Of a stretch of 64,000 nucleotides of DNA, positions 1,841 to 15,979 are shown piece by piece. The notes below the pieces were generated by a model. It saw only the letters and a list, made by a program, of their open reading frames with translations. It did not search any database and was not told the origin of the DNA. The position numbers and the translations under genes are program-made. Position 1 is the first letter of the stretch. Every line of letters begins with the position of its first letter. The stretch comes from Macrostomum lignano (lineage: Eukaryota). Location: NCBI GenBank assembly GCA_002269645.1, contig NIVC01001259.1:1-64000 (forward strand), given 5' to 3'.

Positions 1841-2342
1841 CGGAGGTGGGCGGCTCTAATTTACAATTGCTCAGAGTAACATGCAATGAATTGAGTCTTC
1901 GCAGTAAGAGACCGTCTTTATGTCTCTTCTCTACCGTCTTCACGCGTCTCTAAAATTATGCAAGTGAGGCTGTTAAGGCAGTCAAACATTCAACAAAATT
2001 AAATATATTAATACTACTTTTTATTGGAAGATCCGAACCGATTCTGGTTCTGGAATTGGTAATGTAAAAAGCCTACATGAGAATTGCCGCCGAGATTTGC
2101 CACGTTCGTTTTGCCCGCGAGTGAATTGCCCGCAGAACTTTGCCACAATGCTTTTTTCCTGCAACGTATTTAGCACGCGGCAGATTTTGTCTGCGTTGCC
2201 CCAATGCTTTAGTATTCTTAAGCAGTTATACCATCGAACTAGGTTTTGATCGGGTAAATCTCCCTAATTGAATTCTAAGCATTGTAGGCAAACCTCGGCG
2301 GGCACATCTCGGCGGGAAAAATTTGTTTGCTGGCAATTTCGT

Positions 2343-3924: not shown

Positions 3925-6900
3925 ATGAAGTTGATATTCGCTTTGCTGCTGCTTGCATTGTCGGCTCAGCTGCTATTCGTTGATGCCGCCCAGCTGCTCA
4001 ACAGGCAGCGCAGGCGCATCGACCAGCTGGGTCACATGATCTCCGCCACCACCGGCCATCACTATGCCGCGTACATCGGCTACGGCAACTACTGCGGCCC
4101 CGGCGGCGCGGGCGTGCCGGTGGACAATCTGGATGCGTGAGTGCGGGCTGGGGAGCGTTCTCGTCCAAGATTTGATATTTATGCGCTTTGATACTACTGA
4201 AATTAATATCTACTGCAATGCTCGAAGCTCAACATGATAATGTGAAAGTGATTTCACCTTGGTTCAAACAATGAAATGGCGCCTCTCTCTCAAACGAAAT
4301 GGCGCCTCTCTCTATCAAATGAAATAGCGCCTCTCTCTCAAATGATATGGCGCCTCTCTCTCAAATGAAATAGCGCCTCTCTCTCAAATGAAATAGCGCC
4401 TCTCTCTCAAATGATATGGCGCCTCTCTCTCAAATGAAATGGCGCCTCTCTCTCTCAAATGAAATGGCGCCTCTCTCTCAAATGATATGGCGCCTCTCTC
4501 TCTCAAATGAAATGGCGCCTCTCTCTCAAATGATATGGCGCCTCTCTCTCTCAAATGAAATGGCGCCTCTCTCTCTCAAATTGAATGGCACCTCTCTCTC
4601 AAATGAAATGGCGCCTCTCTCTCTCAAATAAAAATAGCGCCTCTCTCTCTCAAATAAAAATAGCGCCTCTCTCTCTCAAATAAAATGGCGCCTCTCTCTC
4701 AAATGAAATGGCGCCTCTCTCTCAAATGATATGGCGCCTCTCTCTCAAATGAAATGGCACCTCTCTCTCAAATTAAATAGCGCCTCTCTCTCAAATAAAA
4801 TGGCGCCTCTCTCTCAAATGATATGGCGCCTCTCTCTCACAAATGATAAGGCGCCTCTCTCTCAAATGAAATGGCGCCTCTCTCTCAAATTGAATGGCGC
4901 CTCTCTCTCAGATAAAATGGCGCCTCTTTCTCAAATGAAATAGCGCCTTTCTTAAATGAAATGGCGCCTCTCTCAAATCAAATGGCGCCTATCTTAAACG
5001 AAATGGCGCCTCTCTCAAATGAAATGGCGCCTATCTTAAATGAAATGGCGCCTCTCTCTCAAATTAAATGGCGCATTTCACACAAATGAAATGTCTTTCT
5101 CTTTTTCAGATGAAATGGCGCCTCTCTCTCAAATGAAATGGCGCCTCTCTCTCTCAAATGAAATGGCGCTTCTCTCTCAAACGAAATTGCGGCTCTCTCT
5201 CTAAAATGAAATGGCGCCTCTCTCTCAAACGAAATTGCGGCTCTCTCTTTCAAACGAAATGGCGCCTCTCTCTCTTAAACGAAATGGCGCCTCTCTCTCA
5301 AACGAAATGGCGCCTCTCTCTCAAATGTAATGGCGCCTCTCAAATGTAATGGCGCCTCTCAAATGAAATGGTGCCTCTTCTCTCAAATGAAATGGCGCCT
5401 CTCTCTCAAATTAAATAACGCCTCTCAAATGAAATGGCGCCTCTCTCTCAAATTAAATAACGCCTCTCAAATGAAATGGCGCCTCTCTCTCTTTCTCAAA
5501 TGAAATGGTGCCTCTTTGACTTACTTTACTTAGCTGCAGGGTCTCCGTGCGTCCGGAAACAGCGAGGAGGCGTTGCCGCCCATTTCGCTAGGAGGTGGAT
5601 TGTCGCTCGCCCGGTAGCCCTTAGATAGCGGATGAGCTGGCAGAGATTCTCGGGCCTGAAAACGTCGGAGAGGTCCGGGTTTGGGCCGAGGTAGGTGAGC
5701 CTGTCCTGAGTAAAGGCGGGGCATTCACAGATGAAGTGCTCCGCATTCTCGACACCGGAGAGGCAGAAAGGGCACTCCTCACTGCGGATTTTCCCCTGGA
5801 GGTGACGATGCCTGGCAAAGCAGCCATGACCCTAGAGGGCCATGGTCACCGTCCTGATGTCCCTGCGGTTGAGTCCAAGCAGGGCCCTGCGCAGGGCGGA
5901 GGAAGGACAGGGGACAGCCGCGCGGGATTGCCGGCAGTCGGGGCGTTAGCCCACCTCTCCCTGTGCTTAGAAGCCACCCACTGTTTGATCCGAGTGGTGA
6001 CAACGGCGATGGGGGTGGGGGCCACGGGCAGGGGACCAGTGAAAGAACCGGTCGAGCCAGCCTTGGCCAGGCGATGCAGTCGAGGACTGTACGCAAGCAG
6101 GTGGTGGTGCGCTCAAGGGCGTGAATCGCCGCTTGACTGTCTGAGTGGAGGGTTATCTCCTTCCCCCAGACGCGCTGATTGTACAGCTCCATGGCGCAGG
6201 AGCTGATGGCGAGAACTTCGTTCTGGAAGACGGTGAGCAGGTGCCGGTGTGTTGGGAGAAGGTCGCCACAGTTCTCCCTCCAGACACGATGCAGTAGCCG
6301 TAGCCAGAGGCGAAGTTGATTTGGATTTGGATTTGGTCAAGCAGACGGCGGGTTGTTCTCATTGCCTCCCCTCTAACAAAGAGGTCGAGGGGGAATGTCC
6401 AAGAAGGAGTTCATGCCGGCAAAGGGCGTAGAGGGAGCCGCGCTCATGATAGCTCGACAAGCGCGGCCTTGCACCCTATTTAGAACCTCAAGAACCCCTT
6501 TCACCTCTAGGGCACTATTCCAAATGAAGCCGGCGAAGGAGATGGCCGGTCTAACAATGGCAGTGTAGATCCACCGAAGGCGGCGGGGGTGAGGCCCCAG
6601 GTAGCACCGAAAGCTCCGCGGATCTGCGCGAGAGTCGCGAGAGCTTTGCGGGCTTTGGTTTGGACGTGCGGGGTCCAGCTCAACCTGTGGTCGAGGGTGA
6701 CGCCCAGACATCTGGTTTGTTTCTCCATGGCAACAGGTTTGCCATAGAGGGAGAGCGGTTCGATCCTCAGTTTCGGCGGCTGGTGAACATGATAGCCACG
6801 GTTTTAGACTCAGAGAACCTGAGACCGCAGCTATGTGCTCAGCGCTCGGCACGGTGGATGAAGGCTTGAAGGAGGTCCCTGAGGACCGCGGGTGATGGTC

Positions 6901-9900
6901 CAGCCACAGTGACGGTAACATCGTCCGCATAGCCGACCTCCTGAACTGGGTCCGGATGCGGGCTGCAAAGCAGCTCGTCCATGACTAAATTCCAGAGGAT
7001 CGGGTTGAGGACTCCACCTCGCGGTCCGCCTTTCTGGACTTCCACGGAGCGTGAGTGTCCCAGGAGGTGGCAGTACGATGGGAGACCATGTACATGATCC
7101 AGCGAGTGAGGTGCTCATGCGTGCCCCGGGATTCCAGGGCCCGCTTAAAGGCATCAAAGAGCACATTATTGAAAGCACCATCAATGTCGAGGAAAAGCGA
7201 CAGCGCGTATCCACTGCCAAGCACGGCGCGCTCCAGCTTGTCGACAATTGCGTGCAGCGCACTTTCGATGGAGCGTCCAGGACGAAAGGCGTGCTGATTA
7301 GGGGAGAGCGGGGAGTTCCTCAGCTCAACGAGGAGGCGTCAGAGCACCAGCCGTTCCATCAGTTTGAGGAAGAAAGACGTCAGACTGATAGGGCGGTAAG
7401 CTTTGGCAGAATGATAGTCTCCCTTCCCTGGTAGTCTCATCTTGCCAGGCTTTTGGCACGTACCCGAGGGTAATGCTGGCCTTGAAGAGGTTGCAGAGGA
7501 GGCCGAGAAACCTGTCATTTTTAACTACCTCATGGAGGAAGGCAGGATAAATGCTGTCAGGTCCCGGTGACTTGAAAGGAGAGAAGGATTTTGCGGCGCG
7601 AGCCATCCTCTCTCTGGTAATGATGGTCGAAGCCAGGATCTGTCCGCCCGGAGAGTGGTCCGGTGGGCCTAGCTGCGGTGCGGCACGTGGGAAAAAAGAG
7701 CTGGTGAGCATAATGTCCAGCGATTCCCCAGGGTTCTCAGCGAGCCGGCCGTCCGGTCTTTTAATGACTGAGAGCTTTGACATTTTGTCGAGGGTGAGAG
7801 CCTTAACTACGCGCGAAGTAGGGCGGGTGCCTTCTAACTCCGCGCAGTATTGGCGCCATTTGTCGGACTTGGCTTTCCTGGTTTCACGCTTAAAGTCGCG
7901 GATCGCTTCTTGGTAGGCGGCCAGGTCAGCTGGGTCCTTGCTCTTGCGAGCTTTCCGTTGGAGGCTCGCCTTTGCCTTGCGCCGGAGGGATCCAAGCGCC
8001 GGGTGCCACCAGGGGGCGGATTTTTTGCCTTTGTAGGCTTTAAGAGGACAGGAAGCCTGATGGGCTGTCAGGACGGTCTTGCTGAGCAAGTCTGCAAGGT
8101 CATCCACTTCCTGACAGGTGGTTGGAGCGGCGGTAGACAGCTGATCTGTCTGGCATTTCAGGGTTTCCGTGAAAGCCGTCCAGTCAGTGTTCCGGACGTT
8201 CCTTTTCCACAGGATGTGAGGCTTGGGGCAAGAGGATTGCAATCGAAAACGAACGAAGCGATGGTCAGACAGAGATTCCTCTTCGTCCCACACCTCCCAG
8301 TCCTTGACTAAAGGAGTCAAGCCATGGGAGACGAGGGTAACGTCGAGGGCCTCCGTCCATCGCCCGTTGTCAAAGGTGGGGGTTCCACCAATGTTGCAAA
8401 ACTCAGTATTGGTGGTGCAGATGTAAGCAAGGAGTTCCTCGCCTCTGCTGTTGGAAGTATTACTGCCCCAGTGGGTGTGGTGAGCGTTGACGTCGCCCGC
8501 CACCAACAGCTCGAACCTACGGTTAGAGCAGTAGTCCACGAGGGAGATGAGGTTGGGTGGAACCGCGGGGCCATCGCCAGGGATATAAATCGAGGCGATG
8601 ATGACCGTGCGGTTGGTGATAAATGGTTGAATTGAATGACACAAAGGTCTCTGTCAGAGAGGTCCGGTCTGTGCCAAGCTTTGAGATGGGTTAACATGGC
8701 TGCTCTGGGGTTTTGGGGGTCTTGAAAGCAGTCAAAACCAGCAGGAATATTCAGAATCTTACCTTTCTTTGTCCAGGGCTCCTGGATTAGGATAATGCCC
8801 GGTTTCACAAAGTTTGCCACCCGCATCAGGTTGGTCGAGGCCGCGATGCAGTGGTGTAGGTTTAGCTGCAGGATGTCCACTCCGGGGAATCCACGAGTGG
8901 TCCGCGCAGCTTCCTGCCGGCTCAAGGCGAGTTGTGCAGGAGAGTCGCCTCTTCTGCCTCGCCGATAGCTCCAGGCTCCAGTTCCATGGGCTCCTCCCGG
9001 ATGGTCTCCATGGTCGAGGGCGGGCCGCCACCTGGGCGGCATTCTCGCTCTCGGCCCGGTTTTCCGGGGGGCCGCAGTGGTGACACTGGGCTGGGGGTTG
9101 CTGCGGTTGTGGGCCCTGGCGGTGTCCAGCAGCTGCTTTGCGCGCTGAGTCAGACCAGAGCGTATGGTCTTCCGGGCGGGTTTCCGGCCCTTTCCACGTC
9201 CGCCTGTTGCTGCAGCTTTCGCGGCTTTCCCCCTGACGGGGTCCACGTCCTCGGAGGGGTCGTGACGACCGGGAGCTTCTTTTACTGGGCGTTTCCGCCC
9301 GGCAGAGTCCCCGCTCGCCCGCCTACGTTTCTCCGGGGGCGGTGGACGGGTGGCGTCAGACTCAAAGCTAAAGAGCTGAATCTGCATCAGCCCGACAGAG
9401 ATGAGAGACATGTCCGGATAGCGGAGCATCCAGCTATCCGACAGTCCAAGAATAGCCGTGAAGTCGTTTCCGCCCGGCTTGGAGATGGTCTCGTGAACTA
9501 CGACACCGTTTGCCGGTAGCTCCGGGTTGGTAGCCACTAGCAGGTGACGCAGCTCGTCGGCCTTGGTGATGCAGCTGCGAGCCGGGATCCAGGCACGGTG
9601 CCGGTGTGTCCGGGGTCGTTCATCCTCCCTGTAGATAAACAGGTTTTCCAGCTCGGTGCCCCAGTCGAAGGTTTTCAGCAGCTCGAGGAGCTGCTGTCCT
9701 GACTGGCTGTCGGCGGGCTGGATATGGAGGGCTTGGTCCTCGACTTTCGTCTTTTGGACTGGAATGGTGGTGCCGCTCAAGGCCATCTTGACCAGGTGGG
9801 AGTCCAACCTGCGCCAGATAAGGTCGAGCTGTTCGGCCGTAAGAGGCGTCTCCTGGCCTTGGATAACCTGGGCCGGCCGCCTCTTGGCCATAGCCGCGTA

Positions 9901-10970
9901 GGTGCGCTTCGGCTTGGTGGTTTGGCCAGCGCCCCCCGTTTTGGATCCCTCCACGGCCGTGGGAGCTTCCACACTGCAGAGGTCCCGCCACGGGAGGGGC
10001 CAGCCGCACCAGGAGCTTCGGCGGCACCTGATGCATCTGGCCGGCGCGCGGGGTCCACCCCCTTGTCGGATGTCGGCTCCTCCGCGGGGTTCGCAGAGTT
10101 CCGGCACCCTCCTCGGAGGGCGGCTTTCGCATTCCTCCGTTCCTCCGCTTTGCGCTGGAGAAAGACTACGGGCCCTCGTTTTAGAAATCTGAGGTCCGCT
10201 GTCTTGTTGTCCAGCCACTCCGGTGTTGTCCTGAGCGGCGGCAGCGGCAGACTGAGAGAGGCACCGGAGGTTCCGGTGTTGCGAATGTCCGGCTGGGCCG
10301 CGGTACCAACCTCGGTTGGTGCTCCAGCAGCCTCGGGCGTGTTGGATGTAAATGAATACTCCATGAGTCGCTGAAAGGCGAATGGGGACCAGAGGTGAGA
10401 AGCTGCTGGGCCGTAACCCCAAACCCACCAGCCAGGCCAAGAGGTAGCGACCGGGGGCTGGTTTAAGCCCTTACCGGCCCGACCGCTAGCAACCGAGAAA
10501 CTTGGCTAAGAGCCCGGCTTGGAAAAACCAGAGGCCGAAACCAAAGTACCATCAGCGCGGTACTACACTGGGCCCTTGAGGGAAGCAGGAGGAGTGCCTC
10601 CGGAGCCTGCGGACTGGCCGCATACCCTGTTAAGGTCATAGGGTGATACCTGTTCCTCAGAGCCGTGACCAGAGGTACCTGATACGCACAGGTTCACTTC
10701 CGGGCGGAGCCCGTACCCAACTTGGCCAACAGGCCACGGATGGGTTGCCGCCGCCGGAGCCCAGTCAGTCCAGCAGCCCTAGAGCTGCCTTGAACACATG
10801 CGGGGCGTGAACCCCTGGGTCGGCTTGTGAGTCAGCTTGGAGAGAGTTCTCCCGCCATTCCTGCACCAGAATAGAGGGGGTGCAGGTGTGTAGGATCGCA
10901 GACCTTAGCTCGTAGGCCTGGTCTGTCTCATGCTACACAGGCGTGCTGAACCCACCTTGCATGCATGGTG

Positions 10971-11044
<74 letters not shown>

Positions 11045-12656
11045 GAAATGGCGCCTCTCAAATGAAATGGCGCCTCTCAAATGAAATGGCGCCTCTCAAA
11101 TGAAATGGTGCTTCTCAAATGAAATGGTGCCTCTCTCTCTCAAATGAAATGGCACCTCTCAAATGAAATGGCACCTCTCAAATGAAATGGCACCTCTCAA
11201 ATGAAATGGCGCCTCTCAAATGAAATGGCGCCTCTTGAATGAAATGGTGCCTCTCTCTCTCAAATGAAATGGCGCCTCTCAAATGAAATGGCGCCTCTCA
11301 AATGAAATGGTGCCCCTCTCTCAAATTGCGGTGCCCCTTAATAAACGGCTCGCACAGGGAATTTTAAATTAATTGAAAATGTACTCAACAATTTCCTTTT
11401 TCAAATTCAATAAACGTCAAGTTTACCTAAAATTCTAATTGCTAACTAGTGAAGCCAATCAAACTAAATTTTAAGTGGTTCACAAAAAACTAGTCAAAAG
11501 CGTATCCCAATCTACAAATAGTGGTAATAGCTAACAAAAAGCAATTCCCCGCCCCAATTTTCAGCAAAGGGAGGGGTTACCTCACCTGAAAATAATTATG
11601 TTTCTCTTGCATAAAGCAGAGCGAAAAATGCTTACAACTCTAAAATTACTATAAAATTAACAGGTGCTGCCAGGTGCACGACTACTGCTACGATGATCTG
11701 ATGGAAAAGAAGAACGCTGGAAAGTGCGGCTCAGGCAGCGGCCCCGTGTTCAATCAGTACCTGTCCAGGTTTAACTACAAGGAGAAGAGCAACGGCCAAC
11801 TGGAGTGCCGTAAGAACTTCTTTGATGTGCATTTCAGTTCCTGCCTCTTCATTTCCTCTTTTCCTATCTCAAGGTCTTCTTGTGTCTTAGGTCTTCGTGT
11901 GTCTTTTGTCTACTTGTGTCTTTGGTCTTCTTGTGTCTTAGGTCTTCTTGTGTCTTAGGTCTTCTTGTGTCTTTTGTCTACTTGTGTCTTTGGTCTTCTT
12001 GTGTCTTTGGTCTTCTTGTGTCTTAGGTCTTCTTGTGTCTTAGGTCTTCGTGCGTCTTTTGTCTACTTGTGTCTTAGGTCTTCTTGTGTCTTAGGTCTTC
12101 TTGTGTCTTAGGTCTTCGTGCGTCTTTTGTCTACTTGTGTCTTTGGTCTTCTTGTGTCTTTGGTCTTCTTGTGTCTTTGGTCTTCTTGTGTTTTTAGGTC
12201 TTCTTGTGTTTTTAGGTCTTCTTGTGTCTTTGGCCTTCGTGTGTCATAGGTCTTCCCCTGGGTCTTGGGTCTTCCTGTGTCGTAGGTCGTCCTGTGTCCT
12301 TGGCGTTCCCGTCTTCACCTCTGTCTCTGAGGAACTGCCTTCAAAGTGCATGGTTCACACTCATGATATAGATGACGAGATCTATACCTCCAAGACTCTT
12401 CAGCCCGCCAGCTCGCACCCTATCTAATTGTGTTTCAGTGGATGATCGTAGCACCGACTACTCCAACTGCTTGTACGAACTGTGCCAGTGCGACAAAGTG
12501 TTTGCCGACTGCCTTCGCCCAATCAAGGATCAATACAATATTGAGAACCTGAAGGAGAGCCAGAAGTACCTTCGCAGTCTGGTGCTGCTGATCGAGACTG
12601 CTCCGAGCGTAGCCGACTGGGTGTGGCGCATTGTTGAGTCCCTGCTAGCTGCTTGA
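3925..12656 (+). CDS. Secreted phospholipase A2 (group I/II-like fold), paralog 1; join(3925..4136,11664..11809,12439..12656), 191 aa
   Basis: Signal peptide, RQRRR propeptide site, Ca loop YGNYCGPGG, catalytic [11 protein letters not shown] and CQCDK (Asp99 equivalent), 10 Cys. All introns are GT..AG with consistent phases (2,1); the spliced length of 576 nt is an intact frame. Confidence 0.93.
4268..5515. repeat. Minisatellite aaatgaaatggcgcctctctctc (about 19-25 bp units), left arm, PLA2-1 intron 1
   Basis: Direct tandem repeats; the same unit resumes at 10965 beyond the LINE. Confidence 0.95.
5700..8890 (-). pseudogene. LINE ORF2 APE-RT-RNase H, broken by several frameshifts; RNase H lacks recognisable DGS and WVPGH..GNE..AD segments
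   Basis: Pieces appear in ORF-track entries 8317..10440, 7325..8644, 6985..7224, 6839..7045, 6507..6728, 6373..6930 and 5779..6192. Confidence 0.85.
8920..10364 (-). pseudogene. LINE ORF1 (frameshifted); central domain resembles the DUF4780-type ORF1 of LOA elements
   Basis: ATG at 10364; the frame switches near 9950 into ...[28 protein letters not shown]...FTAILGL...[11 protein letters not shown]. An acidic C-terminus ending LLHNSP* lies in another frame. The domain name is from memory of the family, not a search. Confidence 0.6.
10753..10964 (-). ncRNA. HDV/CPEB3-like self-cleaving ribozyme at the LINE 5' end (predicted)
   Basis: Hand-folded nested double pseudoknot: P1 GCAUGC/GCAUGU with G1.U, P2 CCCAG/CUGGG, P3 GGG/CCC, L3 UUCACGC, J1/4 GU, P4 hairpin, J4/2 CUGA. 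G1 is 10964, the base adjoining the TSD. Confidence 0.8.
10965..11330. repeat. Right arm of the aaatgaaatggcgcctctc minisatellite with a (CT)n expansion at 10971-11040
   Basis: Direct repeats matching 4268-5515. Confidence 0.95.
11868..12300. repeat. 17-bp minisatellite gtcttaggtcttcttgt in PLA2-1 intron 2
   Basis: Tandem units with variants, degenerating rightwards. Confidence 0.9.
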
Positions 12657-13868: not shown

Positions 13869-15979
13869 ATGAGAATTTCACTGAGTCTGGCCTCGCTTCT
13901 GCTTGTACTCGTAATTGCAACGGCGGTGGTACATGCGCAGGAGGACTCTACTCGCCTGGTCCGCAAGCGCAGGCGTCTCGACCAACTGGCCCGCGTACTG
14001 AGCGCTGCCACGGGCCAGAGCTACGCGAGTTACGTCGGCTACGGAAACTACTGCGGCAAAGAGGGCAGCGGACAGCCGGTCGATAAAATTGACGCGTGAG
14101 TGCGGCACGAACGCATGATTAGGGTGCGTGTAGCTTTACTGGATTAATAGCCGAGTGTATATAGAGTTAATATTGGGTAAGATTAGGTCTAATACGTGTC
14201 TTTGTGATGTTCTGTCGGATAAATACCTGTCTAGATGGTGTTATGTTGGATAAATACCTGTCTAGATGATGTTCTGTTGGATAAATACCTGTCTAGATGG
14301 TGTTCTGTTGGATAAATACCTGTCTAGATGATGTTCTGTTGGATAAATACCTGTCTAGATGGTGTTCTGTTGGATAAATACCTGTCTAGATTGTGTTCTG
14401 TCGGATAAATACCTGTCTAGATGGTGTTCTGTTGGATAAATACCTGTCTAGATGGTGTTCTGTTGGATAAATACCTGTCTAGATGGTGTTCTGTTGGATA
14501 AATACCTGTCTAGATGGTGTTCTGTTGGATAAATACCTGTCTAGATGGTGTTCTGTTGGATAAATACCTGTCTAGATATGTTCTGTTGGATAAATACCTG
14601 TCTAGATGGTGTTCTGTTGGATAAATACCTGTCTAGATGGTGTTCTGTTGGATAAATACCTGTCTAAATGGTGTTCTGTTGGATAAATACCTGTCTAGAT
14701 GGTGTTCTGTTGGATAAATACCTGTCTAGATGGTGTTCTGTTGGATAAATACCTGTCTAGATGGTGTTCTGTTGGATAAATACCTGTCTAGATATGTTCT
14801 GTTGGATAAATACCTGTCTAGATGGTGTTCTGTTGGATAAATACCTGTCTAGATGGTGTTCTGTTGGATAAATACCTGTCTAAATGGTGTTCTGTTGGAT
14901 AAATACCTGTCTAGATGGTGTTCTGTTGGATAAATACCTGTCTAAATGGTGTTCTGTCGAATAAATACCTGTCTAGATGGTTTTCTGTCGAATAAATACC
15001 TGTCTAGATGGTGTTCTGTTGGATAAATACCTGTCTAGATGGTGTTCTGTTGGATAAATACCTGTCTAGATGGTGTTCTGTTGGATAAATACCTGTCTAG
15101 ATGGTGTTCTGTTGGATAAATACCTGTCTAGATGGTGTTCTGTTGGATAAATACCTGTCTAGATGGTGTTCTGTTGGATAAATACCTGTCTAAATGGTGT
15201 TCTGTTGGATAAATACCTGTCTAGATGGTGTTCTGTTGGATAAATACCTGTCTAGATGGTGTTCTGTTGGATAAATACCTGTCTAGATGGTGTTCTGTTG
15301 GATAAATACCTGTCTAGCTGGTGCCCAGCTTGATAAATGCATGTGCTCAACTCATCATCGAATGCATCGACAATTCCAGCTGCTGCTTACAGCACGATCA
15401 CTGCTACGACAGACTGAACGCCAAAGACAAAAGGAACCAGTGCGGCTTCTTGTTCGGCACGTACATAACAGCGTACTCGTACCAGAATGCGGACAACGGG
15501 CTGATACTCTGCGGTAAGAATTCAGAGGCAGCTCTGCGGTAAACCCGCCTGACTCTCGCGTCAGAACCCCTTGTTCGACCCACATTCATTTGGGGTGTTT
15601 GTGCATGAAAATTGTCCTGCGGGTTGTTTACGTGTTATTCAAACCCCTTTGTGTGCACCCTTTGTGAGCGGTGTATTAGAGCGTGCCTGCGTACAGCACA
15701 CCGGAAAGAAAGCAGAATCCTGCCACTGAACTGCTGTTCCATCCTCAGTGATCCTTCAAATTTTCAGTTGACAACGGCAAAACTGCCAAATCCAAGTGCA
15801 AGCGAGAGCTGTGCCGGTGCGACCTGGAGTTCGTGCGCTGCCTCCAGCCAGTCCAGCACCTGTACAACACGGCCAACTTAAAACGCCAGAAGGCGCAGCG
15901 AGTCATGGCGGGGATTGTGGAAAAAACTGGACGGCTGTTTAGAAATGCGAAGGACACGATTTTGTCCTGGATTGGTTGA
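13869..15979 (+). CDS. Secreted phospholipase A2, paralog 2; join(13869..14095,15380..15513,15768..15979), 190 aa
   Basis: Signal peptide, RKRRR site, YGNYCGKEG, DACCLQHDHCY, CRCDL, 10 Cys. Same intron positions and phases as paralog 1; 573-nt intact frame. Confidence 0.93.
14205..15317. repeat. 31-bp minisatellite ggataaatacctgtctagatggtgttctgtt in PLA2-2 intron 1
   Basis: Tandem repeats, period 31. Confidence 0.97.

What the first reader, a model, noticed from the sequence alone, without database searches (positions are those of the whole stretch)
10753..10964. Complete HDV/CPEB3-like ribozyme whose cleavage site is exactly the 5' end of a LOA-like LINE
Seen (minus strand): the first element base after the 11-bp TSD is G10964. 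P1 GCAUGC (10964-10959) pairs with GCAUGU (10801-10796) with the G1.U wobble. A ~135-nt J1/2 folds into hairpins (ugugUAG/CUAcaca, cagacc/ggucug, ccugcacc/ggugcagg). P2 CCCAG (10819-10815) pairs with CUGGG (10764-10760), extendable by gccg/cggc. P3 is GGG/CCC around L3 UUCACGC (10811-10805). J1/4 is GU, P4 spans 10793-10769, and J4/2 is CUGA with the catalytic C at 10768. Known: L3 and J1/4 parallel the mammalian CPEB3 ribozyme (UUCACGU ... GU, single-pair P1.1), and HDV-like ribozymes process the 5' ends of R2, RTE, L1Tc and Baggins elements. Inference: the element is excised from read-through transcripts rather than using its own promoter, which explains the exact TSD/G1 match. The fold is intact although the ORFs are broken. 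It lies antisense to the PLA2 pre-mRNA, so it should not cut that transcript. P1 is 6 bp rather than the usual 7.
Basis: partly seen in the sequence, partly recalled or inferred. Interest (0 to 1): 0.85.

Follow-up and report, generated by a model that had tools for sequence, protein, structure and literature searches.

The report
HDV-like ribozyme at a LINE's 5' end
The first 212 bases of a dead 5.4-kb LINE retrotransposon can fold into every helix and core nucleotide of a hepatitis-delta-type self-cleaving RNA, with the predicted cut exactly at the element's first base; this is a known way for such elements to trim their transcripts, so it is a good new example, not a new mechanism.

Summary
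On the minus strand, a 5449-bp LINE (10964 to 5516) sits in a 19-23-bp satellite, flanked by the duplication AGAGGCACCAT. Its first base is G10964. From that base the RNA can form a complete HDV-type nested double pseudoknot. A 139-nt J1/2 folds into its own domain (z = -3.6).

- **Chance:** a deliberately loose descriptor starts at base 1 in 8 of 20,000 dinucleotide shuffles. A stricter one never does.
- **Published range:** the two oddities, a 6-bp P1 and a long structured J1/2, both lie inside published ranges.
- **Relative:** a distant LINE relative (L001) carries a compact fold of the same type upstream of its ORF1.

Weak points: no Rfam hit, no second copy of this family and so no covariation test, no ribozyme in a sister family, and cleavage untested. 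The "LOA-like" label is unverified. This copy is dead and lies antisense in a PLA2-like intron.

Verdict: probably a genuine 5'-processing ribozyme of the parent element (about 0.7). It is a new member of a known kind. [quoted passage not shown]

The parts
10965..10975 (-). 5' target-site duplication AGAGGCACCAT, part of a satellite unit
10959..10964 (-). P1 5' strand GCAUGC. The predicted cut is 5' of G10964, the first base of the LINE.
10820..10958 (-). J1/2 peripheral domain, 139 nt. It is a multi-hairpin fold closed by a roughly 10-bp helix, 10955-10945 with 10836-10827. That leaves 3 nt to P1 and 2 nt to the extended P2.
   Evidence: -58.2 kcal/mol, z = -3.58, 0 of 200 shuffles as stable
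10815..10824 (-). P2 5' strand CCCAG (10819-10815) plus extension GCCG (10824-10821), with A10820 bulged
10802..10814 (-). P3 GGG (10814-10812), L3 UUCACGC (10811-10805), P3' CCC (10804-10802). The first U and the G of L3 sit where HDV and CPEB3 have the U.G wobble. The C at L3 position 3 is placed to pair with G10795 (P1.1).
   Evidence: PMC4836649
10796..10801 (-). P1 3' strand GCAUGU. U10796 pairs with G10964.
10794..10795 (-). J1/4 GU, the P1.1 partners: G-C plus U-U, as in CPEB3
   Evidence: PMC4836649
10769..10793 (-). P4 hairpin, 9-10 bp with a 2-nt bulge and a CUAG loop
10765..10768 (-). J4/2 CUGA, with C10768 in the catalytic-cytosine position
10753..10764 (-). P2 3' strand CUGGG (10764-10760) plus extension CGGC (10756-10753)
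5516..10964 (-). The whole LINE, 5449 bp and 60% G+C.
- 5' UTR: 10964-9892.
- ORF1-like region: starts at 9891.
- Endonuclease: about 8883-8240.
- RT: about 7576-6842, with YADD at 6931.
- RNase H-like motif: 6156-6112.
- CCHC motif: 5774-5721.
- 3' end: ...GTAAGTCAA.
At least 5 frameshifts break the reading frames.
5505..5515 (-). 3' target-site duplication AGAGGCACCAT

Best explanation
The first roughly 212 nt of this LINE encode an HDV-like self-cleaving ribozyme. It belonged to the active parent of this now-dead copy.

Proposed mechanism:
1. An active copy has no need of its own promoter. It is transcribed as part of a longer RNA that starts upstream.
2. As the 5' UTR emerges, P1, P3, P4 and the J1/2 domain fold. 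The closing helix of J1/2 brings P1 and P2 together, and P2 and P1.1 complete the double pseudoknot.
3. C10768, with a Mg2+ ion held at the L3 U.G pair, catalyses cleavage 5' of G10964.
4. The released RNA starts exactly at the element's first base. A full-length cDNA copy therefore begins with G directly next to the target-site duplication, as seen here.

Shown: the fold, its position at base 1, its rarity by chance, the stability of the J1/2 domain, and a fold of the same type in a distant relative.
Inferred: catalysis, co-transcription, and any further role such as translation start or protein binding.

In this particular copy the motif is a fossil. The reading frames are broken and the element lies antisense to its host gene.
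For: - **Fold and boundary:**
- **Uniqueness:** it is the only loose-descriptor match on the 5449-nt sense strand, and it lies at base 1.
- **Shuffles at a fixed start:** 8 of 20,000 loose, 4 with the G.U pair, 0 strict. The background rate in real DNA is about 2-3 per 10,000 start positions.
- **Positive control:** the descriptor recovers the CPEB3 ribozyme at its known cut site (that sequence was recalled from memory).
- **J1/2 domain:** z = -3.58, closed by a helix next to P1 and P2. This matches the activating 'pinch' domain described in PMC4908430.
- **Both halves of the pseudoknot:** each appears as a minimum-energy fold, P1+P3+P4 and extended P2+P3+P4.
- **Core positions:** they match those described for HDV and CPEB3 in PMC4836649, namely G1.U, the L3 U...G pair, P1.1 of G-C plus U-U, and a 4-nt J4/2 that starts with C.
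- **Relative:** L001 (32% identical endonuclease, DUF4780-type ORF1) has a 96-nt fold with the same proportions on the sense strand, 490 nt upstream of its ORF1: a 6-bp P1 with G.U, a 5-bp P2, GC-only P3, L3 UCCGCGU, J1/4 GG and J4/2 CUAA.
- **Precedent:** ribozymes at LINE 5' ends are reported in six clades (PMC5786205, PMC6765202, PMC3774820).
Against: - Rfam gave no match to any model, even at E up to 10. These searches are only weakly informative. One spanned the 139-nt insert, and the other left out the P1 5' strand.
- No second copy of this family was found in the window or in any collection. There is therefore no covariation test, and no check that other full-length copies start at the same G.
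- Among the 80 related loci fetched, only the locus already held as L001 (re-found as L051 and L057) shows the fold. A sister family with a sharply defined 5' end (L007 type) has none, even with relaxed rules.
- J4/2 is CUGA, where HDV and CPEB3 have two adenines after the variable position.
- P1.1 has only one Watson-Crick pair.
- The descriptor was written after the candidate had been seen.
Confidence: 0.7

Rival explanations
1. Chance resemblance. A GC-rich, highly structured 5' UTR happens to satisfy a permissive pseudoknot descriptor, and the element's 5' end is set by an internal promoter or by the end of reverse transcription.
For: - The loose descriptor hits real DNA about once per 4-8 kb.
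- One such hit, in L037 and L062, lies inside ORF1 coding sequence and is clearly false.
- No Rfam hit and no covariation data.
Against: - The hit must start at one particular base. That happens in 4e-4 of shuffles with the loose descriptor and in fewer than 5e-5 with the strict one.
- All functionally critical unpaired nucleotides are also correct.
- A relative has the same arrangement.
Confidence: 0.15
2. A structured 5' UTR element with a non-catalytic job, such as binding the element's own protein, internal ribosome entry or RNA stability. It would keep an HDV-type fold but no longer cleave, or cleave very slowly.
For: - HDV-like folds in R2 are reported to bind the R2 protein and to support translation start (PMC6765202).
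- J4/2 CUGA, a one-pair P1.1 and a 6-bp P1 could all weaken catalysis.
- CPEB3, the closest core match, has a flexible and weakly formed P1.1-P3 core (PMC4836649).
Against: - The exact match between the predicted cut and the element's first base is what cleavage predicts. Binding roles do not need it.
- The stable J1/2 'pinch' domain is the feature shown to speed up large HDV-like ribozymes (PMC4908430).
Confidence: 0.1
3. The ribozyme serves the host gene by processing the PLA2-like pre-mRNA, rather than serving the LINE.
For: The element lies in an intron of a PLA2-like gene.
Against: - The fold is on the strand opposite to the gene.
- No descriptor match exists on the + strand at this place.
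- On the complement, G.U pairs become C-A mismatches.
Confidence: 0.02

Closest known systems
HDV-like ribozymes at the 5' ends of non-LTR retrotransposons: R2, R4/Dong, Baggins (LOA clade), RTE, L1Tc/Ingi
   Same: - A double-pseudoknot ribozyme on the sense strand whose cut site is the element's first base (PMC3774820, PMC6765202, PMC5786205).
- Elements that rely on read-through transcription and often sit in introns or downstream of LTR elements.
- A P1 of 6-7 bp, a P2 of at least 5 bp, and a long variable J1/2.
   Different: - The host element is an unclassified APE-type LINE. Its ORF1 shows at most a weak DUF4780 signal (E = 0.18).
- It has no detectable sequence similarity to curated ribozyme models.
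- The clade is not established.
Mammalian CPEB3 ribozyme (Rfam RF00622)
   Same: - L3 UUCACGC against UUCACGU.
- J1/4 GU giving a P1.1 of one G-C plus a U-U pair.
- A 4-nt J4/2 that starts with the catalytic C.
- G1.U at the cut site (PMC10274809, PMC4836649).
   Different: - CPEB3 is a compact 68-nt intronic sense-strand element with a 7-bp P1, a 4-nt J1/2 and J4/2 CGAA (PMC4836649).
- This one has a 139-nt J1/2 domain, a 6-bp P1 and J4/2 CUGA.
- It belongs to a transposon and gives no RF00622 hit.
Large HDV-like ribozymes with a structured J1/2 domain (drz-Agam-2 type, with helix P1.2)
   Same: A stable helix-closed domain in J1/2 that juxtaposes P1 and P2, and an extended P2 (PMC4908430).
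   Different: Here the domain is larger and branched, with three hairpins. Its effect on rate is untested.
The HDV-like fold in the related LINE locus L001 (ENA metagenome contig), found here
   Same: - A 6-bp P1 with G.U, and a 5-bp P2 abutting a GC-only 3-bp P3.
- A 7-nt L3 of the form U-Y-C-R-C-G-Y.
- A G opening J1/4, and J4/2 of the form C-U-R-A.
- Sense strand, upstream of ORF1.
   Different: - J1/2 is only 41 nt with no clear structure.
- P1.1 can form two pairs (CC/GG).
- The helix sequences are unrelated, and the LINEs share only about 32% endonuclease identity.

Membership tests
HDV-like self-cleaving ribozymes | Nested double pseudoknot in the order P1, J1/2, P2, P3, L3, P3', P1', J1/4, P4, J4/2, P2' | tested here: met
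   Script descriptor; helices read directly. The same descriptor recovers CPEB3.
HDV-like self-cleaving ribozymes | P1 of 6-7 bp whose first pair is G.U at the cut site | tested here: met
   A 6-bp P1 with G10964.U10796. The 6-7 bp range is stated in PMC4908430 and PMC3774820.
HDV-like self-cleaving ribozymes | A 3-bp P3. An L3 carrying the U...G pair at the base of P3, and a C that pairs with the G of J1/4 (P1.1). | tested here: met
   GGG/CCC, and L3 U1-U2-C3-A4-C5-G6-C7 with J1/4 GU. The roles of these positions are taken from PMC4836649.
HDV-like self-cleaving ribozymes | A cytosine opening a short J4/2 between P4 and P2', followed by purines | tested here: met
   CUGA 10768-10765. It has only one terminal A, where HDV and CPEB3 have two.
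HDV-like self-cleaving ribozymes | Match to curated covariance models (Rfam HDV, CPEB3, drz-Agam and related families) | tested here: inconclusive
   No hit at the gathering score or at E up to 10. The 139-nt J1/2 insert, or the missing P1 5' strand in the short sub-window, would defeat these narrow models. The compact L001 fold was not detected either.
HDV-like self-cleaving ribozymes | Helices supported by compensatory changes among homologous copies | not testable with these tools
   No homologous copy of this 5' UTR was found. The comparison with L001 involves two sequences that were both picked by a pairing descriptor, so it is circular.
HDV-like self-cleaving ribozymes | Mg2+-dependent site-specific self-cleavage that depends on the J4/2 cytosine | not testable with these tools
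   Needs a bench assay.
LINE 5'-end processing ribozymes (R2, Baggins, RTE, L1Tc type) | Cut site coincides with the first base of a full-length element, on the coding strand | tested here: met
   The boundary is fixed by the duplication and by the satellite periodicity. The ORFs lie on the same strand.
LINE 5'-end processing ribozymes (R2, Baggins, RTE, L1Tc type) | Recurrence in related elements | tested here: inconclusive
   Present in the L001 lineage. Absent at the defined 5' end of the L007-type sister family. Most of the 80 loci do not reach their 5' ends.
LOA clade of LINEs | Placement within LOA in an RT phylogeny | not tested
   No reference LINE sequences were available. Only generic domains were seen: Exo_endo_phos_2 and RVT_1.
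LOA clade of LINEs | An RNase H domain after the RT | tested here: inconclusive
   A motif ...EVLAI...[15 protein letters not shown] is visible at about 6156-6112, but there is no Pfam hit at E up to 0.1.
CPEB3 ribozyme family (RF00622) | Match to the family model, and an orthologous intronic sense-strand location in mammals | tested here: not met
   No RF00622 hit. The motif is part of a transposon and lies antisense to its host gene.

The most novel reading that the evidence does not exclude
The ribozyme is a portable 5' module that LINE lineages of this group gain and lose. It is present in the window's element and in the L001/L014 type, where it sits on an extra 260-nt 5' extension. It is absent from the L007 type, which shares the downstream UTR. 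A further step is more speculative: the CPEB3-like core (L3 UUCACGY, and a P1.1 of G-C plus U-U) would mark the kind of LINE module from which the mammalian CPEB3 ribozyme descends.
Probability: 0.1. Interest if true: 0.6.

Novelty: new member of a known kind. Interest (0 to 1): 0.4.

Why it matters
If it is active, it adds one more LINE lineage that relies on ribozyme trimming of read-through transcripts instead of its own promoter. It is also a natural example of a large, branched J1/2 domain on a CPEB3-like core, which could be used to study how peripheral domains speed up this fold. For annotation, it shows that curated RNA models miss such ribozymes when J1/2 is long. A descriptor anchored at LINE 5' ends finds them. 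It does not change current understanding of the mechanism.

Tried and rejected
- **Rfam:** searched the whole window at the gathering score, and 10700-11000, 10755-10830 and L001 2150-2265 at E up to 10. No relevant hit.
- **Other copies in the window:** blastn of the element against the window found only itself.
- **Protein searches:** ORF1 gave nothing. The endonuclease gave 5 proteins, with one close relative on a 1.5-kb contig that lacks the 5' end. A 5' UTR ORF of L001 found only itself.
- **Related loci:** 80 were fetched. The loose descriptor gave many hits on both strands with no enrichment on the sense strand, 82 against 125. The L037/L062 hit lies inside ORF1 and is false. A second apparent 5' boundary, the L071 type, lies in coding sequence. 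A search for 3' ends gave no clear boundary.
- **Core scan:** a 20-mer of the core found one chance hit in a Roseicyclus coding region and none in viral contigs.
- **Covariance model:** building one from the two seeds was abandoned because MAFFT misaligned them.
- **UTR similarity:** no DNA similarity between this element's UTRs and any locus.
- **Shared 3' motif:** the 10-mer AGTAAGTCAA is shared by this element's 3' end and the flank 6 nt upstream of L001's ribozyme. No wider alignment supports it, so I treat it as a lead only.
- **Papers not held:** Ruminski et al. 2011 could not be read, and a look-up of Webb et al. 2009 under a PMC number recalled from memory also failed.

Full report
**Observation.**
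- P1: GCAUGC 10964-10959 pairs with GCAUGU 10801-10796, closing with G10964.U10796.
- P2: CCCAG 10819-10815 pairs with CUGGG 10764-10760. It can extend by GCCG 10824-10821 / CGGC 10756-10753.
- P3 and L3: GGG/CCC around L3 UUCACGC (10811-10805).
- J1/4 is GU, P4 spans 10793-10769, and J4/2 is CUGA with C10768.

An independent script descriptor re-finds exactly this arrangement. J1/2 is 139 nt rather than about 135.

**The element and its ends.**
- The region belongs to a 5449-bp LINE on the minus strand (10964 to 5516). Pfam finds the endonuclease (Exo_endo_phos_2, E = 2e-19) and RT pieces in two different frames.
- An RNase H-like motif and a C-terminal CCHC motif are visible by eye.
- At least five frameshifts break the reading frames, so this copy is dead.
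- The LINE is inserted in a 19-23-bp satellite, with arrays at 4270-5491 and 11036-11318.
- The flanking 11-mer AGAGGCACCAT recurs throughout the satellite with one mismatch, 47 matches in all. The boundary is still exact. The 5' flank ends ...GGCACCAT, where the unit would continue TTCA but GCATGC follows. The 3' flank reads ...GTAAGTCAA|AGAGGCACCATTTCA. Removing the element and one copy of the 11-mer restores a regular unit.
- G10964 is therefore the element's first base.

**Is it more than chance?**
- I wrote a deliberately loose descriptor: P1 6-7 bp, J1/2 up to 250 nt, P2 at least 5 bp, P3 3 bp, L3 5-9 nt with a C, a G after P1', a P4 stem, and J4/2 of the form C-N-R-A.
- It is not rare in real DNA. 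It gives 31 raw matches on the 128 kb of both window strands and 207 on 645 kb of related loci, about 2-3 per 10,000 start positions. A match on its own therefore means little.
- What counts is the fixed start. In 20,000 dinucleotide-preserving shuffles of the element's first 300 nt, a match begins at base 1 in 8. Four of those have the G.U pair. None has a UYC-type L3 and a GC-rich P3.
- On the whole 5449-nt sense strand, the only match is at base 1.
- The descriptor recovers the CPEB3 ribozyme at its known cut site (that sequence was recalled from memory and partly checked against a primer in PMC10274809).

**Peripheral domain.**
- J1/2 alone folds to -58.2 kcal/mol, against -43.5 +/- 4.1 for shuffles (z = -3.58, 0 of 200 as stable).
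A roughly 10-bp helix (10955-10945 with 10836-10827) closes it, leaving 3 nt to P1 and 2 nt to the extended P2.
- This is the architecture that Webb and co-workers showed to accelerate large HDV-like ribozymes by pinching P1 and P2 together (PMC4908430).
- The pseudoknot-free predictor returns each nested half of the double pseudoknot in turn: P1+P3+P4 for 225 nt and extended P2+P3+P4 for 212 nt.

**The two oddities are within known ranges.**
- PMC4908430 describes "a 6- or 7-bp P1 helix".
- PMC3774820 gives a P1 of typically 6 or 7 bp and a P2 of at least 5 bp. It reports J1/2 loops of 216-498 nt in silkmoth R2, and a spacing between P1 and P1' of 23 to over 700 nt.

**Core nucleotides.**
- PMC4836649 describes, for HDV and CPEB3, the G1.U wobble, the U20.G25 pair at the base of P3, a CPEB3 P1.1 of one G-C plus a U-U pair, and a 4-nt J4/2 with the catalytic C followed by two adenines.
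- Here L3 is U-U-C-A-C-G-C. Its U1 and G6 take the wobble positions. C3 faces G10795 and U2 faces U10794. J4/2 is C-U-G-A.
- CPEB3's L3 is UUCACGU (primer GTTCACGTCGCGGCC in PMC10274809), so 6 of 7 positions agree.
- Three of those positions are functionally fixed, so the remaining agreement (3 of 4) is not significant. "CPEB3-like" is a description, not evidence of descent.

**Relatives.**
- No other copy of this family was found. The window holds none. ORF1 has no detectable homologue. The only close endonuclease relative (73% identity) lies on a 1.5-kb contig without a 5' end. The UTRs match nothing at DNA level. Covariation therefore cannot be tested.
- Distant relatives (25-48% endonuclease identity) gave 80 loci. 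With the stricter descriptor, the only sense-strand hit upstream of an ORF1 is in L001. L051 and L057 carry the same hit with identical flanks over the aligned 341 bp, so they appear to be the same genomic locus re-sampled in other metagenomes.
- The L001 fold is 96 nt: P1 GGUGGC/GCCACU (6 bp, G.U), J1/2 41 nt, P2 UGUCA/UGACA, P3 GCC/GGC, L3 UCCGCGU, J1/4 GG, a short P4, and J4/2 CUAA. It lies 490 nt upstream of a DUF4780-type ORF1.
- It sits just downstream of an LTR-retrotransposon fragment. The review PMC6765202 describes this setting for promoter-less Baggins and RTE elements.
- Six bases upstream of its G1 lies AGTAAGTCAA, identical to the last ten bases of the window's element. This may mark the 3' end of an upstream LINE copy, but it is a lead only.

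**A negative result among relatives.**
- A sister family (L007, L023, L036, L055, L078) has a sharp 5' boundary at GGTAGTTCTACAGG with unrelated flanks. It shows no HDV-like fold there, even with relaxed rules.
- L001 and L014 share this UTR block but carry an extra 260 nt or so at the 5' side, which holds the ribozyme.
- The ribozyme is thus not universal in this group. It behaves as a 5' module.

**Curated models.** Rfam gave no relevant hit at the gathering score or at E up to 10, for the window or for L001. These families are narrow, and either the long J1/2 or the missing P1 strand would defeat them. I count this as inconclusive, not as refutation.

**Context.**
- The LINE and its satellite lie between a + strand exon encoding YGNYCGPGG (4081-4107) and one encoding CCQVHDYCY (11665-11691). 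Those are the calcium-loop and catalytic motifs of secreted phospholipase A2.
No descriptor match exists on the + strand at this place, so the host transcript should not be cut.
- Host-gene transcription would not yield sense LINE RNA from this copy.

**Mechanism and rivals.**
- Most likely (about 0.7): the parent element used this ribozyme to cut itself out of read-through transcripts. This gives an RNA, and hence full-length insertions, that begin at G1.
- Rivals: a chance match in a structured GC-rich UTR (about 0.15); an HDV-type fold kept for binding or translation without useful cleavage (about 0.1); a role in the host pre-mRNA (excluded by strand).

**Novelty.** Ribozymes at LINE 5' ends are established for R2, R4/Dong, Baggins, RTE and L1Tc. 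One summary lists them as occurring in six clades, including LOA (PMC3774820, PMC6765202, PMC5786205). This is a new member of a known kind. The clade of this LINE remains unresolved, because no RT phylogeny could be made.

Noticed in passing
window 4270-5491 and 11036-11318; 10972-11040: A 19-23-bp satellite (unit about TTTGAGAGGCGCCATTTCA on the minus strand) flanks the LINE on both sides. Next to the 5' junction, the GA part of one unit has expanded to (GA)34.
   Followed up: partly
window 4081-4107, 11665-11691, 15381-15407 (+ strand): Secreted-PLA2-type motifs: [18 protein letters not shown], and a second catalytic motif CCLQHDHCY 3.7 kb further on. This suggests tandem PLA2-like genes. 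Pfam did not score the single exon.
   Followed up: partly
window 11872-12298: A 17-bp tandem repeat, 25 copies (AGGTCTTCTTGTGTCTT), starts just after the PLA2-like exon.
   Followed up: no
window 10470-8320 (- strand): A single 717-codon open frame runs from the 5' UTR through the ORF1-like region (Met at 9891) into the start of the endonuclease, with no stop between ORF1 and ORF2. ORF1 has only a sub-threshold DUF4780 signal (E = 0.18).
   Followed up: partly
L001 2144-2159: AGTAAGTCAA, identical to the last 10 bases of the window's LINE, lies 6 nt upstream of the predicted cut site of the L001 ribozyme. It may be the 3' end of an upstream LINE copy in tandem. An LTR-retrotransposon integrase/RNase H fragment lies further upstream.
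   Followed up: partly
L007 2292, L036 678, L055 561, L078 3820, L023 75; L014 1-131; L001 2273-2420: Sister LINE families share a conserved 5' UTR block that starts sharply at GGTAGTTCTACAGG and has no HDV-like fold. The L001/L014 type carries an extra 5' extension of about 260 nt, which holds the ribozyme.
   Followed up: yes
window 1885-1962 (- strand): A cluster of loose-descriptor matches shares one core (P3 GCC/GGC, L3 GCCCUCG, J4/2 CUGA). L3 lacks the U-Y-C start, so it is probably chance.
   Followed up: no
L084 7787-7806: The 20-mer GGGGTTCACGCCCCGCATGT occurs once in an uncultured Roseicyclus genome, inside what reads as coding sequence and without the rest of the fold. I take it as a chance match.
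   Followed up: yes
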